Of a stretch of DNA of 64,000 nucleotides, positions 5,783 through 54,411 are shown in pieces. A program made the position numbers and the translations under genes. The notes beneath the pieces were generated by a model. That model was not told the DNA's origin, made no database searches, and was given only the letters and a program-made list of their open reading frames with translations. The stretch is from Isurus oxyrinchus. Its lineage: Eukaryota. The stretch covers positions 14,818,001-14,882,000 of the forward strand of contig JANJGN010000024.1 of NCBI GenBank assembly GCA_026770705.1, given 5' to 3'. Within the stretch, counting starts at the first letter, position 1, and each line of letters begins with the position of its first letter.

Positions 5783-6101
5783 CAGATTGATGATAATGCA
5801 ATGGCTCATGTTAAATTGTTACTGACTTTAAGACATCTATTACTTTTGGGATTAATTAGAAAATCTTAATTGTACCAATCAAAGACATGGCTAGATGCCT
5901 AACAATGCACATCAGTGCATGGTTATATAGTTTTATTGCGGACCTTTTACCCTTGCAGATATGATCACATGATCCTACATTACAATAGTGACTATAGTCG
6001 AAAAGTACTTCATTGGCTGTAAAGTATTTTGGGACATCCTGAAAGACATTATATAAATATAAAAGTCTTTTATCTGATCAGCAAACTCCAAGATTGTTGG
6101 G

Positions 6102-6327
6102 AAAAGCAAAACACTGCGGATGCTGGAAATTTAAAATAAAAAAACATGCTGGAAAAACTCAGAAGGTCTTCAAGCATCTGTGGAGAGAGAAACAGAGTTA
6201 ACGTTTTGAGCCCAATATGACCCCTCTTTGGAACTCATGAGTCATAATGGACTCGAAACATTAACTCTTTCTCTCTCCACAGATGCTGCCAGACCGGTTG
6301 AGTTTTTCCAACACTTTCTATTTTTAT
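6102..6327. mobile_element. Miniature PLE inverted twin (older)
   Basis: Degenerate TSD TCCAAG(AT/TC)TGTTGGG at 6087-6101 and 6328-6342. Confidence 0.82.
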
Positions 6328-6574
6328 TCCAAGTCTGTTGGGTCTGCCAAGGTGGGGAAAAAAATTACTGGAGTTAACAGCTAGAGTCAACTGGAGGATA
6401 TATTTTTAAACAGTGGCAGCGCTGTGGGGAGGAGGTCCTGTGCTGCAGCGCAGTGCGTAATATCCCTGCCTTTGAGCCAGAGTCCCACTCCAGGACTTAA
6501 TGGCCATGGAAGGTATTTTCATAACGTGGCCAAACAGGTTGATTGTCAACCTGCAAGTCCTTCCAACATGCCTA

Positions 6575-6695
6575 TGGGAGGCAATAAGAGTGGGAGGCAA
6601 TAAGAGTGGGAGGCAATAAGAGTGGGAGGCAATAAGAGTGGGAGGCAATAAGAGTGGGAGGCAATAAGAGTGGGAGGCAATAAGAGTGGGAGGCA
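6575..6695 (+). repeat. Perfect 16-bp minisatellite (TGGGAGGCAATAAGAG) x7.5
   Basis: Seven identical units plus a partial one, no spacers. Confidence 0.95.
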
Positions 6696-49699: not shown

Positions 49700-49738
49700 A
49701 GTTCTGTCGAAGGGTCATGAGGACTCGAAACGTCAACT
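49700..49738 (+). ncRNA. Minimal hammerhead ribozyme motif (variant core)
   Basis: AGUU-CUGUCGA-A-GGGUC augag GACUC-GAAAC-GUC|AACU. Confidence 0.75.
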
Positions 49739-51431
49739 CTTTTCTTAATTCAGTTCTCCTGATGGGAATTGGTAAGTTAAATTACACTTTCTCATGTTAA
49801 TGCTAGGGAGGGAGATTTTGGTAACTCATAGAAATTTATAAGTGATCACCTTTCCAATTAGGGCTGATACCTTCCATCAAATCTATCTGTGTTTGGTCAG
49901 GATTGGGTTGACTTCTGCAGGAAGTAGTCCAGTCTGTGCTTCTCCCATTTTCCAAGGAGCTTCTTGGATGAGCCCCTGATTATCTTACCTCCTCCTCCTT
50001 TCATCAGCTCCGAATTGAACAAACTTTCCTTTGGTTCTGCTCTCGCAGAAGTATGGAATTATTTCTCAGATTAGTACTGATTTAAAAAATAAATTGCTGG
50101 AAGTACTCAGGTCAGGCGGCATCTGTGGCGAGAGAAACAGAGTTAATGTTTTAGGTTGAAGGCCATTCATTAGTACTGACTCATGAAACTAAAATCAGGA
50201 TTTCCTTGCACAAGCAGATGTTATGACCTGAAGTGCTGTGGTTGAAGGGGAGTTGGAAGCAGATTAAATAGCAACTTTCAAAAGGGAATTAGATCTGTAC
50301 ATAGAAAGAGAACAATTTGCAGGGTTATGGGGATTAAACAGCGATTAATTAGATAAGTCTTCGAAAGAGTCTATCTAGGCAGGATGGGCCAATGACCTCC
50401 TATGTTGCATGACTGTAACTGGTAACATTGCATTTTGGAGAACTGGTTGCAGTGTCATTGACAGAGGCCTGAGAGTAGGTTGACTGTCAGCTCCCTCAAC
50501 AAGGACATGGAGCAACAACAGTGATGGGAATATTGCAGATTCTCTCGGTTTTTAAACTGCATTTCCTTGGTCATAAAAAGAAATCAACGGCAGCAAAGAG
50601 CGAAAGTCAATGGAGATGAAGCTGCCACAAGTATTGGTGCAATTGGCTTGTTTGAAGGATGTTTCAACTAGGTGTTCTTTTGATACACCAGAGAATTGAG
50701 GCTGGCATAAGTAGAGATATCTGCAGGTTTGTTGCGTGTGACAGAAACGGTGCAAGTACTGTAGAACTGAATTTTCAGATAAATCATACAGTGTGGCGGT
50801 CTTCCTGAATTCTGGGGAAAGGCTGTCACGGGAGGAATGCATTCATGTTTCTCTGTGGATATGGCAATGAATATTGTTGACAAGGTGAATGAGAGATAGT
50901 ATTTGTGTTTGGTGATTTTGAAGAGACGTTTTGGCTTCATGTTGTGTAGCTTCCAGCGTTGAAAGACTGTGTGCCAATCCAATATCCACCTCCCCCCCCC
51001 CCCACCCAAGTCTTTTGGCCTCTTGATGCAAAGGGAACAAAGTTGGCTCTGTGTTCACCTGCAGGTGTGTGCCCTGTGATTTCATCCTGTCTGAAAACGT
51101 CAAGGAATTTGGTCGAGACCAAAGTTTCAAAGGGAAAACAAATTAATTTGTAGAATGCATTCCTCAAAGCACCAGTAACAATCCTGGATTAAAAATGGAA
51201 TGTCACTTATTCACTGACTGTACCAGTGGCCTTGACCATAGCTGTTTTCCAAACGATGGGTAAGGCCATTGTTTTACTCTTCTCACAGGGAAAAAAAATG
51301 AACAGAATCGTGGAGTGTGGTTTCCCCCCCCCCACAAAACATGGGTTTAAAAAGAAAACCTGACTCACATATAATAAAGCAGGATTTAACAATGTCAAAC
51401 AATGGCCTTTAATAGGGTGGGTTCAGATTCT

Positions 51432-51997
51432 AAAATAAAAATACCTGGAAAAACTCAGGGGTTCTGGCAGCATCTGCGGAGAGGAACACAGTTAACGTTT
51501 CGAGTCCGTATGACTCTTCAACAGAACTAAGTAAAAATAGAAAAGAGGTGAAATATAAGCTGGTTTTAGTCGGGGTGGGGGAGGTGGATGGGATGGGACA
51601 GGTAGAGCTGGATAGAGGGCCAGTGATAGGTGGAGACAGCCAAAAGATGTCACAGACAAAAGGACAAAGAGGTGTTGAAGGTGGTGATATTATCTAAGGA
51701 ATGTGCTAATTAAGGGTAGAAAGCAGGACAAGCAAGGTACAGATAGCCCTAGTGGGGGTGGGGTGGAGTGAAGGGATTGAAATATGGTAAAAGGTAGAGA
51801 TAAAACAATGGATGGAAATACATTTAAAAATAATGGAAATAGGTGGGCAAAGAAAAATCTATATAAATTATTGTGGGGGAAAAAGGGGGATTGGAAAGGG
51901 GGTGGGAATGGAGGAGAGAGTTCATGATCTAAAATGAACTCAATATTCAGTCCGGAAGGCTGTAAAGTACCTAGTCAGAAGATGAGCTTTTATCTTA
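51432..51997 (-). mobile_element. PLE 3' fragment with inverted 12-nt tip
   Basis: 3' UTR plus ORF end; GCTTTTATCTTA tip at 51986-51997; TSD GGTTCAGATTCT at 51420-51431 and 51998-52009. Confidence 0.88.
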
Positions 51998-54411
51998 GGT
52001 TCAGATTCTGCCTGGCCATTGGCAATATCCGAGATGTATAGTAATATTTACGAACATACAAATTCGGTGCAGGAGTGGGCCACCTCGGCCCCTCCAGCCT
52101 GCTCCACCATTCAATAAGATTATGGCTGATCTGATAGTCTTACCAAACTTGTGACTATTGCTGCTGCTTTCACTAGCTTCTGGCAACACATTCTGGGAAC
52201 TTTCCACCTAAGCTTTAACTAGACATCACTCTGCTCTGTTTGTTTATATTTATGTCAAAGAAGCAAATTCTGATTTTCTCCAGATGTCTCTGGTTGCTGT
52301 TCTCCACTAGTAAGTTGATTTGCAGGGAATGAATAGACCTCGACACTGAAGAAGCCCAAGAATTGCTTATTTGAAGTGAATTTATTCTGATTAAGGAGGT
52401 TCTCTCCTTAGTGGCTCCCTATCTTTACAACCACGTTTAAGTATGTTGGATAATGAGTTTGTTCCATGCTTCTGTGTGTTTTGAGGACCATTTATCCTCC
52501 ATCTGAAAGGAAGTGGAGCCATTTCCACAGTGATTGGACTCACAGCTGTCACGTAGCACACAATTTATAATCTAATTGTCCTCCTGTACTTCATCTTCCA
52601 GTGCTGGAGAGTTATGTGTCACATTCAGCCTAAATTGTTTCAGTTTAAGCCATGCAGAGGATTGCAATTGGCCTTCTGCCTCATGCTGCTCAGCTCAACA
52701 GTTTCCAATTAATTTTTTTTTAACCGGAATTGGAGGTGTCACTTTTTAGCTCTTTCAAGGCACTTAATATTGGAAGCTGCTTGTTCATGTGCATGAGAAG
52801 ATTTAAAAACACAGTCACTTTACAGGATTTGATGGCAGTGTGCAAGATGGCGCGATGTCATTTAGTGCCCATCGTTCCACCTCCTGCCCAAATAGCACTT
52901 TCTCTCTCACAATGGCACCAGATCCAAAGGTAGTGAATCCTCGCAGAGAGAGTCAGCCTAGGGTGTTCACTCACCTTGCAGGTAGTTTCAGTTGGAGTTG
53001 GTGAGGGGCTGACAGCAGATTACCTTACAGTCCTGGTAGCTGTAAATGAGGTATGGTATGGTGAAGGGAAGTCAAAACCCTTTTTAACTTGAAAAGGTAC
53101 TGGGACCCCCACATCTTCTGCAATTTCTCATTTCTACGTGTTCAGTTTTGGTACGTTTATACTTTCAGTCCAATTCATTTTTGCCTTTTGATCTGAGCAC
53201 GATCTTCCCAAACAATATTCTGACCTGTTGCCATTGTGCCATTCAATCCAATGGAGGGTTGATGAAGGGGTAATAACTCTTCTTGTTATTACAGTGTTGA
53301 GCTGGCATTTTGTCCAGGAATAAATTTTAAGAACAATTCACAATATGCCATTAAAATTTCTTTCTACTCACTACCAATGTAAGTAAGTGGGAAGTGTCCA
53401 ATTGAGCTCCTATGAGGTACTATTGAAAGTGAAAGTATTTGGAGATTAGTCATCCCCATATAGACTTGGGTGTGTAATTTGTTTGCTTATGCAGAATCTC
53501 AGGTAGCGCTAGTGATTGTCTCCACATTACCTATTTAAAATTTGTTGTTAACTTTGTTGTTTGAGGGAGCTTGCTGTGTGAAAATTGGCTGCTGCGTTTC
53601 CCACACTACAATAGTGACCACACTTCGAAAATCCTTCATTGACTGTAAAGCACTTTGGGATGCCCAAAGGTTGTACAGAAACAAGTTCTTTCTTCCACGT
53701 ACATTCTCCTTTGTTACCTACTCAACGTGGCACTGAGTCTTCCCACAGATTTGTTGCTTTTTCGATAAACTTTGCATATAATCCCTTGCTCCTCTTTTGA
53801 AATCAAACTAACGAGTTAGTTCAAGGAAAGGATGAATATCTTGGAAACAAGTCCAACGTAATCCTTCATATTAAACGTTTAGCTGAATATAATGTTCTAT
53901 AAGCCTCAATTATGGTGGACTCAAGTGAAGGATAGAATCTGAAGAACACATTCGAGTGATAGGGTCTTTCAATAAATTGGGGGAAAAATGCCTTAACTTA
54001 TTTCAAATAAAAACAGAAAGTGCCTTTTTTAGAAGAGGTGCTGCCCACCAATCCCCCACCCGCTCCCCAGCCACAACCACATCTTCCTCATGAACCAGAG
54101 TTGTTTTGGCACTGAGAAAGGCCATTTGGCTCATTGAGTCCATGCTGGCTTTCTGTTACTGGTATGTTAATTATATTGTTAGGATAACAGCATTGAGGGC
54201 ATACCCACCACATGGACTGCGGTAGTTCAAGAAAGTAGTTCAAGAAAGCAGCTCACCACCATCTTCTCAAGGGCAATTAGCGATGGGCAATAAATGCTGG
54301 CCTAGCCAGCGACATTCACGTCCCATAAATGAATCAAAATAACAGGAGAAAGGCATTGTTTAATTAAGTACTTTGAGCACCTATGACTTGTGTTGGTCCG
54401 AGTTAAGTGGA

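What the first reader, a model, noticed from the sequence alone, without database searches (positions are those of the whole stretch)
6087..52009. Penelope family inserts as asymmetric tail-out twins: one arm from the 3' tip, the other from an internal site (8 of 8 cases)
Seen: eight insertions (6102, 26943, 37460, 38683, 39428, 39735, 45688, 51432) consist of two element 3' ends pointing outward. Seven lie inside a single 11-15 bp TSD; 38683 has only a short repeat. In each, exactly one arm begins at the extreme tip (...CCAGCATCCGCAGTTTTT). The other begins internally: about 30 nt upstream at TTTTTGTTTT in six cases, next to the ribozyme site in two. Two cases have non-overlapping arms, as in classical L1 twin priming; the others duplicate up to 1.85 kb. 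The arms of each large twin share private variants (twin 1: PCPRKR, CACCT, short UTR; twin 2: PCPHKR, CACTT, long UTR), so they were copied from the same source. Known: PLEs can carry inverted terminal repeats and their RT lacks RNase H. Inference: both nicked target strands prime on one intact RNA at two staggered U-rich sites, with strand displacement allowing double copying; an RNA dimer is an alternative. I am not aware of this strict asymmetry rule having been described.
Basis: partly seen in the sequence, partly recalled or inferred. Interest (0 to 1): 0.85.

Follow-up and report, generated by a model that had tools for sequence, protein, structure and literature searches.

The report
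Penelope retrotransposon's known one-sided tail
A very abundant Penelope-like jumping gene in this cartilaginous-fish genome inserts as two outward-facing end copies of which only one carries an extra ~30-letter tail, which is real here but is the already published hallmark of this class of elements.

Summary
All eight insertions are head-to-head (tail-out) pairs of 3' ends of one Penelope-like element (PLE) family. Seven lie inside one 11-14 bp target-site duplication (TSD). In 8 of 8, exactly one arm reaches the distal "tip". The other arm stops about 30 nt earlier in a U-run (6 cases) or at or near the hammerhead-like GTC site (2 cases).

It is not new. The 30-40 bp "tail" on only one of the inverted pseudo-LTRs (pLTRs), or at only one end of the insertion, is described as characteristic of PLEs (PMC3846280, PMC8557442). 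An anole PLE protein nicks and extends both target strands in vitro and starts reverse transcription at two adjacent internal RNA sites, with the tail lying between them (PMC11167929). Earlier notes of this scan report the same signature elsewhere in this genome.

Added here:
- The two start zones are tandem copies of one ~30-nt module.
- Four solo TSD-flanked copies all use the proximal zone.
- In 5 of 8 twins neither arm could be a copy of the other, which rules out simple snap-back.
- The arms are firmly sisters for twin 1 and only weakly so for twin 2.
- One contig from a related sample appears to hold the empty site of twin 1.

What may be new is only the strict one-of-each coupling and its single-complex explanation.

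The parts
6088..6342 (.). Twin 6102. L-TSD 6088-6101. Left arm (-) 6102-6234 reaches the tip. Right arm (+) 6238-6328 ends in the proximal U-run. R-TSD 6329-6342.
   Evidence: The TSD is 14 nt with 2 mismatches. Both arms turn around near ref 2960-2973.
26929..27389 (.). Twin 26943. L-TSD 26929-26942. Left arm (-) 26943-27074 reaches the tip. Right arm (+) 27076-27375 ends at CTGTTTTTGTTTT. R-TSD 27376-27389.
   Evidence: The 14-nt TSD is perfect. The right arm reaches further 5' (ref 2704) than the left arm (ref 2956).
37448..37620 (.). Twin 37460. L-TSD 37448-37459. Left arm (-) 37460-37580 reaches the tip. Right arm (+) 37583-37608 ends at GTC(A) of the hammerhead-like site. R-TSD 37609-37620.
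   Evidence: 31-nt arms, 2 nt between them. The twin sits inside a repeat that looks like a tRNA-derived SINE.
38684..38807 (.). Twin 38683. Left arm (-) 38684-38786 ends in the proximal U-run. Right arm (+), about 38787-38807, consists of the tail only. The arms do not overlap.
   Evidence: (right arm E=0.027). There is only a 7-9 nt flank repeat.
39417..39667 (.). Twin 39428. L-TSD 39417-39427. Left arm (-) 39428-39530 ends in the proximal U-run. Right arm (+) 39532-39656 reaches the tip. R-TSD 39657-39667.
   Evidence: The 11-nt TSD is perfect.
39722..43535 (.). Large twin 1. L-TSD 39722-39734. Left arm (-) 39735-41598 (ref 1206 to the tip). Right arm (+) 41597-43522 (ref 1110 to the proximal U-run). 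R-TSD 43523-43535. Both arms hold the RT C-terminal half and the GIY-YIG ORF.
   Evidence: 2-nt overlap TT at the junction; arms 1784/1827 identical; arms sisters, 100/99; record 19 of run X7 joins the two flanks without the insert.
45676..49756 (.). Large twin 2. L-TSD 45676-45687. Left arm (-) 45688-48752 is nearly the whole ORF through the tip plus a 34-nt T-rich extension. Right arm (+) 48753-49744 (ref 2018 to about 3005) ends 10-13 nt past GTC. R-TSD 45745-type copy at 49745-49756.
   Evidence: arms 962/988 identical; arms sisters in the best tree, but only 63/53.
51420..52009 (.). Twin 51432. L-TSD 51420-51431. Left arm (-) 51432-51986 ends in the proximal U-run. Right arm (+) is about 12 nt of extreme tail, to 51997. 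R-TSD 51998-52009.
   Evidence: The 12-nt right arm matches the end of the tip of twin 39428. It is too short to be detected statistically on its own.
18432..20405 (+). Solo 5'-truncated copy 18445-20392, ending in the proximal U-run, inside a perfect 13-nt TSD. No inverted partner.
21260..21349 (-). Solo 66-nt copy ending in the proximal U-run, inside a 12-nt TSD.
50070..50179 (-). Solo 88-nt copy ending in the proximal U-run, inside a perfect 11-nt TSD.
24829..24902 (-). Solo copy of about 74 nt ending in the proximal U-run, with an imperfect TSD of about 14-15 nt.
56712..59576 (-). Long tip-bearing copy (ref 248 to the tip plus extension). No partner arm and no TSD were found.
16201..16332 (-). 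Older tip-bearing fragment with no recognisable partner or TSD. A similar case lies at 30097-30222 (-). Another at about 13863-13993 (-) has a doubtful short partner at 14017-14040.

Best explanation
These are ordinary insertions of one very abundant endonuclease-positive PLE family in an elasmobranch-type genome.

**Proposed mechanism.**
1. The element's GIY-YIG nuclease makes nicks staggered by 11-14 bp.
2. Both exposed 3' ends prime reverse transcription on element RNA.
3. Synthesis starts inside the RNA, in one of two adjacent U-rich start zones about 30-35 nt apart. These zones are the ends of two tandem copies of a module of roughly 30 nt (TTTCCAG, 6 nt, CWG, U-run).
4. The two cDNAs grow toward each other and are joined head to head, probably by a jump of one cDNA end onto the other. 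The result is tail-out inverted arms inside one TSD.
5. The arm started in the distal zone carries the published "tail". The arm started in the proximal zone lacks it.
6. When only one strand primes on RNA, a solo copy results.

**Shown here.** The anatomy, the TSDs, the two classes of arm end, the one-of-each pattern in 8 of 8 twins, and the sisterhood of the twin 1 arms.

**Inferred.** Priming by both strands, the joining step, and whether one RNA or two are used.
For: **Family.**
- Pfam hits to RVT_1 (E 9e-5) and GIY-YIG (E 4e-4) lie in one 454-aa ORF.
- The nearest Atlas clusters carry HTH_animal, RVT_1 and GIY-YIG.
- 632 homologues score E<=1e-30. The closest named ones are elasmobranch proteins at 58-70% identity.

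**Anatomy.**

**TSDs.** Seven twins score 14 or more. Only 9 of 4000 random position pairs reach 11.

**Two separate initiations.** In 5 of 8 twins (26943, 38683, 39428, twin 1, 51432) each arm holds element sequence that the other lacks.

**Tandem start modules.** Alignment A1 shows TTTCCAG(CAT) twice, about 35 nt apart, in all ten copies from several subfamilies.

**Common origin of the arms.**
- Twin 1 arms are sisters at 100/99 support.
- Each twin 1 arm has 19 derived singleton changes.
- Quartet-informative sites split 14:2:0 in favour of arm pairs.

**Single event.** A 303-nt contig at single-copy depth in run X7 joins 39635-39705 to 43521-43600 with 24 letters between. It therefore lacks the whole 3.8-kb twin 1 (table 8, record 19).

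**Genome-wide ends (table 7).** In raw reads of run X24, loose ends with diverse continuations pile up at three places:
- the proximal end, 43520-43523: 1351 + 2104 + 833 reads;
- the tip, 39732: 921 reads;
- a 5' boundary at 43421: 1449 reads.

**Literature.** PMC11167929 main text; PMC8557442 passages; PMC3846280 passages.
Against: - In the anole system the authors saw no difference in start site between top and bottom strands. The strict one-of-each outcome is therefore not predicted by the published data.
- Four tip-bearing copies have no recognisable partner or TSD.
- Twin 2 arms are sisters with only 63/53 support. At four sites (ref 2057, 2194, 2280, 2705) the short arm matches copy 56712 and not its partner.
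- The inverted junctions could not be checked with reads. The family is present at hundreds to thousands of times unique depth, and the older runs are held only as short contigs.
- The empty-site contig is one record from a different organism label. It has about 10 more letters between the flanks than I expect, and I could not inspect them.
- No hammerhead family is matched in Rfam. The 3' end folds no better than shuffled sequence (z = +1.2).
Confidence: 0.75

Rival explanations
1. Snap-back (self-priming). One cDNA is made by target-primed reverse transcription. Its 3' end then folds back and copies itself, producing the second arm.
For: Three twins have arms that turn around at nearly the same element position with a 2-14 nt spacer: 37460 (both arms at ref 2969), 6102 and 39428. 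PMC3846280 interprets palindromic junctions of PLE inverted repeats as self-priming (Discussion passage).
Against: In 5 of 8 twins each arm has sequence the other lacks, so neither can be a copy of the other. Copying back along the first cDNA would run into the primer DNA. It would give an inverted flank, not a direct TSD. It also gives no reason for the second arm to stop within the same ~5-nt U-run in six cases.
Confidence: 0.08
2. Two independent events or a later rearrangement. A second copy inserted next to, or into, the first in the opposite orientation, or an inversion or assembly error created the palindromes.
For: The family is extremely abundant. Two unrelated tips do face each other by chance at 39650/39736 (pairs I4 and I6). 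The inverted junctions were not confirmed by reads.
Against: Seven times one TSD brackets both arms together and no arm has a TSD of its own. The arms abut directly. Twin 1 is missing as one block in a contig of run X7. The short twins (149-433 nt) are about the size of a read or a read pair, so misassembly is unlikely.
Confidence: 0.04
3. The one-of-each pattern is real but is not a coupling rule. Each strand picks a start zone independently, and 8 of 8 reflects small numbers and what can be recognised.
For: In vitro, start sites did not differ between strands. Two of the eight tip arms are only about 12 and 21-25 nt long. They are recognisable only because they are tips, and an equally short proximal-end arm would be missed. 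The published wording is "often", not "always".
Against: For independent ends, 8 of 8 has a probability of at most 0.004. The six twins with two long arms are all one-of-each (probability at most 0.016), and a tip+tip or internal+internal pair among them would have been easy to see.
Confidence: 0.13

Closest known systems
The "tail" and inverted pseudo-LTR signature of Penelope-like elements (Arkhipova et al. 2013, PMC3846280; Craig et al. 2021, PMC8557442)
   Same: 5'-truncated copies are joined head to head inside one TSD. An extension of about 30 nt lies at the outer end of only one of the two inverted ends. A hammerhead-type motif sits in the repeated end. Truncation is heavy and copy number is very high.
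   Different: No direct (tandem) pLTR is seen in this window. The count is strict here (8 of 8), whereas the papers say "optionally" or "often". Two twins have the second arm starting at or near the hammerhead-like GTC site and not at the proximal site.
In vitro target-primed reverse transcription by the anole Poseidon element PAc (Frangieh et al. 2024, PMC11167929)
   Same: Both target strands are nicked and extended. Reverse transcription starts inside the RNA at two adjacent sites that are not homologous to the target. The tail is the sequence between the two sites. The start sites lie some tens of nucleotides downstream of the hammerhead cut site.
   Different: The family and host differ. 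Their start region is described as an AC-rich stem-loop inside the ORF start; here both zones are U-runs after a repeated TTTCCAG module in what looks like a 3' UTR. They report no strand difference in start site and do not link the two sites to one-sided tails in inverted insertions (I read the main text only; the supplements are closed).
L1 twin priming
   Same: The second target strand primes on the same RNA upstream of the first start. This gives an inverted 5' segment with both element 3' ends pointing outward. The two non-overlapping twins (38683, 51432) look just like this.
   Different: In 6 of 8 twins the arms overlap, by up to 1.83 kb, so the RNA was copied twice. There is no poly(A). 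Both starts fall in fixed zones, not at a random internal microhomology.

Membership tests
Penelope-like elements, endonuclease-positive (Penelope/Poseidon/Neptune type) | One ORF with a reverse transcriptase followed by a C-terminal GIY-YIG endonuclease | tested here: met
   RVT_1 (E 9.4e-5) and GIY-YIG (E 4.4e-4) lie in this order in the 454-aa ORF 46241-47605(-). Both are below Pfam's curated cut-offs, and the result is the same for 41683-43047. Atlas neighbours carry HTH_animal, RVT_1 and GIY-YIG. Homologues carry PF00078, PF26215 and PF01541. There is no PDB sequence match.
Penelope-like elements, endonuclease-positive (Penelope/Poseidon/Neptune type) | Pseudo-LTRs, direct or inverted, formed by an adjacent 5'-truncated copy | tested here: met
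   Inverted form: eight head-to-head pairs. Direct tandem form: none was seen in this window, and no full-length copy is present.
Penelope-like elements, endonuclease-positive (Penelope/Poseidon/Neptune type) | A 30-40 bp tail at only one end of the insertion | tested here: met
   8 of 8 twins. The distal end lies about 30-35 nt beyond the proximal end, or up to about 50 nt with the T-rich extension.
Penelope-like elements, endonuclease-positive (Penelope/Poseidon/Neptune type) | A hammerhead ribozyme motif in the repeated end | tested here: inconclusive
   No Rfam hammerhead match at the gathering score or at E<=10 on two copies. By eye, the motif CTGTCGA-A-GGGTC..GACTC-GAAAC-GTC fits the minimal dimer-type PLE hammerhead described in PMC4209133 (passages), but with T where the core has A6. 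Older copies have CTGATGA or CTGAAGA.
Penelope-like elements, endonuclease-positive (Penelope/Poseidon/Neptune type) | TSDs of variable length and frequent 5' truncation | tested here: met
   TSDs of 11-14 nt in 7 twins and 11-13 nt in 3 solos. Insert sizes run from 66 to 4057 nt.
L1-type twin priming products | The two inverted segments are adjacent and non-overlapping parts of one RNA | tested here: not met
   The arms overlap in 6 of 8 twins, by up to 1.83 kb. Only 38683 and 51432 do not overlap.

The most novel reading that the evidence does not exclude
The one-of-each outcome is obligatory. One integration complex, perhaps the predicted protein dimer, would sit on one RNA (or on an RNA pair held by the dimer-type hammerhead). 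It would occupy both tandem start modules at once, so the two target strands can never start from the same module. The proximal module would serve the strand that can also act alone, which would explain why the solo copies end there. This would turn the long-known one-sided tail of PLEs into a read-out of the geometry of the integration complex. I found no such model in print (searches; three papers read in part; supplements closed).
Probability: 0.3. Interest if true: 0.5.

Novelty: already known. Interest (0 to 1): 0.25.

Why it matters
How PLEs integrate is still poorly understood, and the one-sided tail and inverted ends are their least explained features. This window gives a clean, countable natural record: eight twins, four solos, and two fixed start zones that are tandem copies of one module. 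That record agrees with the 2024 in vitro finding of two start sites and priming on both strands. It also adds a testable refinement, namely that the two starts exclude each other within one event. As a discovery it ranks low, because the signature itself is published and the scan has already met it elsewhere in this genome.

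Tried and rejected
**Steps that led nowhere or gave a negative result.**
- Rfam search for a hammerhead, on the whole window at gathering score and on two copies at E<=10: no hammerhead match.
- Fold of the 3' end: no better than shuffled sequence. The consensus fold proposes a 7-bp GATGCTG/CAGCATC stem around the proximal start zone. All its pairs are invariant, so nothing supports or opposes it.
- Read support for the inverted junctions: not obtainable. Copies of the family swamp the stretch, and the older runs are held only as short contigs.
- A target-site motif oriented by tip side: none is visible in 10 sites.
The rule therefore could not be tested outside this window.
- A search for twins of other families with short inverted repeats: none found. 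One unrelated 44-nt pair lies at 60134/60539.
- TSD searches for the tip-bearing copies 16201, 30097, 56712 and 13863: nothing at 12 of 16 matches or better.
- The idea that the proximal-start arm is always the longer one (a trailing polymerase on one RNA): it holds in 5 twins, ties in 2 and fails in twin 2. Not significant.
- An H2B-like peptide seen by eye at 54373-54741: no Pfam match.

**Rejected readings.**
- Simple snap-back.
- Nested independent insertions.

The reasons are given under the rivals.

Full report
**What is there.** The window has no N. A self-comparison shows many copies of one repeat, including two large inverted structures at 39.7-43.5 kb and 45.7-49.7 kb.

The long copies carry a 454-aa ORF with a YIDD reverse-transcriptase core followed by a Cys-rich linker and an LYIGET...EH block. 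Several results place it as an endonuclease-positive PLE:
- Pfam gives RVT_1 (E 9.4e-5) and GIY-YIG (E 4.4e-4) in that order. Both are under the curated cut-offs.
- The nearest ESM Atlas clusters carry HTH_animal, RVT_1 and GIY-YIG.
- A protein search finds 632 homologues at E<=1e-30. The closest named ones come from whale shark, zebra shark, bamboo shark, a stingray and a devil ray at 58-70% identity. Cnidarian, mollusc and echinoderm relatives lie near 50%.
- No solved structure matches by sequence.

The host is therefore probably a cartilaginous fish, as earlier notes of this scan also say.

**Check of the observation.** I used the reverse complement of 45680-48800 as a ruler, called "ref". 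Every fragment of the family was mapped and its ends were read base by base. A profile of the 3' end finds 24 hits at E<=0.03.

Seven are bracketed by one direct repeat of 11-14 nt:

| Site | Left TSD | Right TSD |
|---|---|---|
| 6102 | 6088-6101 | 6329-6342 |
| 26943 | 26929-26942 | 27376-27389 |
| 37460 | 37448-37459 | 37609-37620 |
| 39428 | 39417-39427 | 39657-39667 |
| twin 1 | 39722-39734 | 43523-43535 |
| twin 2 | 45676-45687 | 49745-49756 |
| 51432 | 51420-51431 | 51998-52009 |

With one scoring rule, these seven score 14 or more, while only 9 of 4000 random position pairs reach 11. Site 38683 scores 9, which 35 of 4000 random pairs reach or pass.

In all eight, exactly one arm runs to the distal end (...CCAGCATCCGCAG plus a T-rich stretch). 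In six, the other arm stops in the U-run CTGTTTTTGTTTT or its subfamily equivalent, about 30-35 nt earlier. In 37460 the other arm stops at GTC(A) of the hammerhead-like motif. In twin 2 it stops 10-13 nt after that GTC.

Two twins (38683, 51432) have non-overlapping arms, the distal arm being only the tail (about 21-25 nt and about 12 nt). The others overlap, by up to 1.83 kb in twin 1.

For independent ends, 8 of 8 one-of-each has a probability of at most 0.004. For the six twins with two long arms it is at most 0.016.

- The tip is a zone. Distal arms end 6 to 34 nt after the CAG that closes the conserved block.
- Four solo copies inside good TSDs all end in the proximal U-run: 18445-20392, 21272-21337, 24829-24902 and 50081-50168. 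Fragment 45366-45446 does too, without a clear TSD.
- Four tip-bearing copies have no recognisable partner or TSD: about 13863, 16201, 30097 and 56712-59576.

None of these breaks the rule for twins. They do show that the proximal zone can act alone.

**Anatomy of the start zones.** In an alignment of ten copies from several subfamilies, TTTCCAG (TTTCCAGCAT in older copies) occurs twice, about 35 nt apart. Each occurrence is followed by about 6 nt, then CWG and a U-run. The proximal ends fall in the first U-run and the distal ends in the second (alignment A1). The two start zones therefore look like tandem copies of one module.

A 7-bp pairing of GATGCTG with the CAGCATC of the tail is predicted. 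It never varies, so it is untested. The whole 3' end folds no better than shuffled sequence.

**Mechanism.** In 5 of 8 twins each arm has element sequence that the other lacks. Two separate initiations on RNA are therefore needed, and a simple fold-back copy of one cDNA is excluded for them.

The arms abut directly. Twin 1 has a 2-nt overlap at 41597/41598, and twin 2 joins ref about 49 to ref 2018 at 48752/48753. This fits a jump of one cDNA end onto the end of the other.

The stagger implied by the TSDs leaves 3' overhangs on both sides, so both can be extended toward each other. This step is inference.

**Are the arms of a twin from one source?**
- Twin 1 arms are 1784/1827 identical and twin 2 arms 962/988. 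Between twins the values are 95.4-96.7%.
- Among sites informative for the four arms, 14 group the arms by twin, 2 group them otherwise and 0 support the third way.
- A maximum-likelihood tree of the five young copies plus one old copy makes twin 1 arms sisters at 100/99. Twin 2 arms are sisters at only 63/53.
- At ref 2057, 2194, 2280 and 2705 the short arm of twin 2 agrees with copy 56712, while the long arm agrees with twin 1. One of these four sites is a CpG site.
- Derived singleton changes are balanced: 19 and 19 in twin 1, 8 and 5 in twin 2. About a fifth of them in twin 1 are CpG transitions. This is as expected if the arms were alike at insertion and then decayed.
- Gene conversion between arms could mimic sisterhood.
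- Only five young copies from one window were compared.

**Reads.** Twenty runs from nine studies hold the stretch, under two coded organism labels. I laid 37601-43600 on three contig sets and one raw Illumina run.
- Depth over the element is hundreds to thousands, against about 0.5-2 over unique DNA in the raw run. The family is very abundant, and reads of this particular locus cannot be told apart. The inverted junctions are neither confirmed nor refuted.
- Loose ends with diverse continuations pile up at 43520-43523 (1351, 2104 and 833 reads), at 39732 (921 reads) and at 43421 (1449 reads). The proximal end, a tip position and a 5' boundary at the start of the hammerhead-like motif are therefore family-wide ends.
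- One 303-nt contig of run X7, at single-copy depth (40), lies on 39635-39705 and on 43521-43600 with 24 letters between (table 8, record 19). This is what an empty site of twin 1 would give, apart from about 10 extra letters that I could not see. It suggests that the whole twin is one insertion, absent from that sample.

**What is known.** Three papers bear directly on the finding. I read passages of the first two and the main text of the third.
[quoted passage not shown] It calls head-to-head the most frequent arrangement and explains it by self-priming.
[quoted passage not shown] Its Fig. [quoted passage not shown]
- PMC11167929 shows that the anole element's protein cleaves and extends both strands. 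[quoted passage not shown] The paper also reports that start sites did not differ between strands, that hammerhead cleavage is not needed, and that the protein is predicted to be a dimer.

PMC4209133 (passages) describes the minimal, dimer-type hammerheads of PLEs. PMC8969392 (passages) mentions inverted pLTRs and short 3' extensions in a curation guide.

Searches for "twin priming" with Penelope-like, for both-strand priming, and for head-to-head pLTRs returned no paper that states an exclusion rule or the single-complex model. Older subscription papers cited for the tail (Arkhipova 2006; Evgen'ev and Arkhipova 2005; Pyatkov et al. 2004) were not available to me, and supplements were closed.

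**Earlier notes of this scan (unchecked leads).** The same tail-out, one-arm-longer signature was reported in other pieces of this genome and judged to be the published hallmark (s1-868623, s1-865399). A note on the hammerhead-like motif with T at core position 6 (s1-869593) matches what I see in the young copies.

**Verdict.** The claim of an undescribed asymmetry is not upheld.

What may be new is small:
- the strictness of one-of-each;
- the tandem-module nature of the two start zones;
- the proximal end of all four solo copies;
- two arms starting at or near the hammerhead-like site.

Interest is 0.25.

Noticed in passing
window 43421 (ref about 2960); arm junctions at 6234/6238, 27074/27076, 37580/37583, 38786, 39530/39532: Eight of the 16 twin arms begin (5' end) within ref 2956-2973, at the 5' edge of the hammerhead-like motif. 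In the reads, 8 of the 15 joints shown end at 43421-43424, and 1449 raw reads have diverse loose ends at 43421. This is a family-wide turn-around or 5'-end hot spot about 33 nt upstream of the GTC site. Its cause is unknown.
   Followed up: partly
window 45688-45721 and 56712-56745: Twin 2 and copy 56712 share a further T-rich stretch of about 34 nt beyond the tip that the other tip arms lack. The template RNA therefore extends past the usual tip, and the distal start is also internal.
   Followed up: partly
window 39635-39705 and 43521-43600: A single-copy-depth contig from a run under another organism label joins the two flanks of twin 1 with 24 letters between. It is probably the empty site, so twin 1 is lineage-specific or polymorphic even though its arms differ by 2.35%.
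   Followed up: partly
window 37601-38000 and about 59800-59900: Twin 37460 sits inside a repeat with a tRNA-like end (...GGTTCAAATCCCAC...). A similar sequence lies near 59850. Read depth at 37601-38000 is 40-60 against about 0.5 for unique DNA, so this is probably a tRNA-derived SINE. No tRNA or SINE search was run.
   Followed up: no
window 45795-45830 (sense ...TTTTTCCAGGTAATTCTG...TTTCCAGCATCC...): In the young subfamily the first module reads CCAG|GTAAT, and the second module ends in ...TTTCCAG. By eye these look like a splice donor and a splice acceptor about 29 nt apart. PLEs are known to keep introns, but this may be coincidence.
   Followed up: no
window 54373-54741: An ORF holds a stretch that, by recall, resembles histone H2B (..SRKQNYSIYVYRVL..) in a broken frame. 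Pfam finds nothing.
   Followed up: partly
window 60134-60177 and 60539-60582: A 44-nt inverted repeat, 75% complementary and unrelated to the Penelope family.
   Followed up: no
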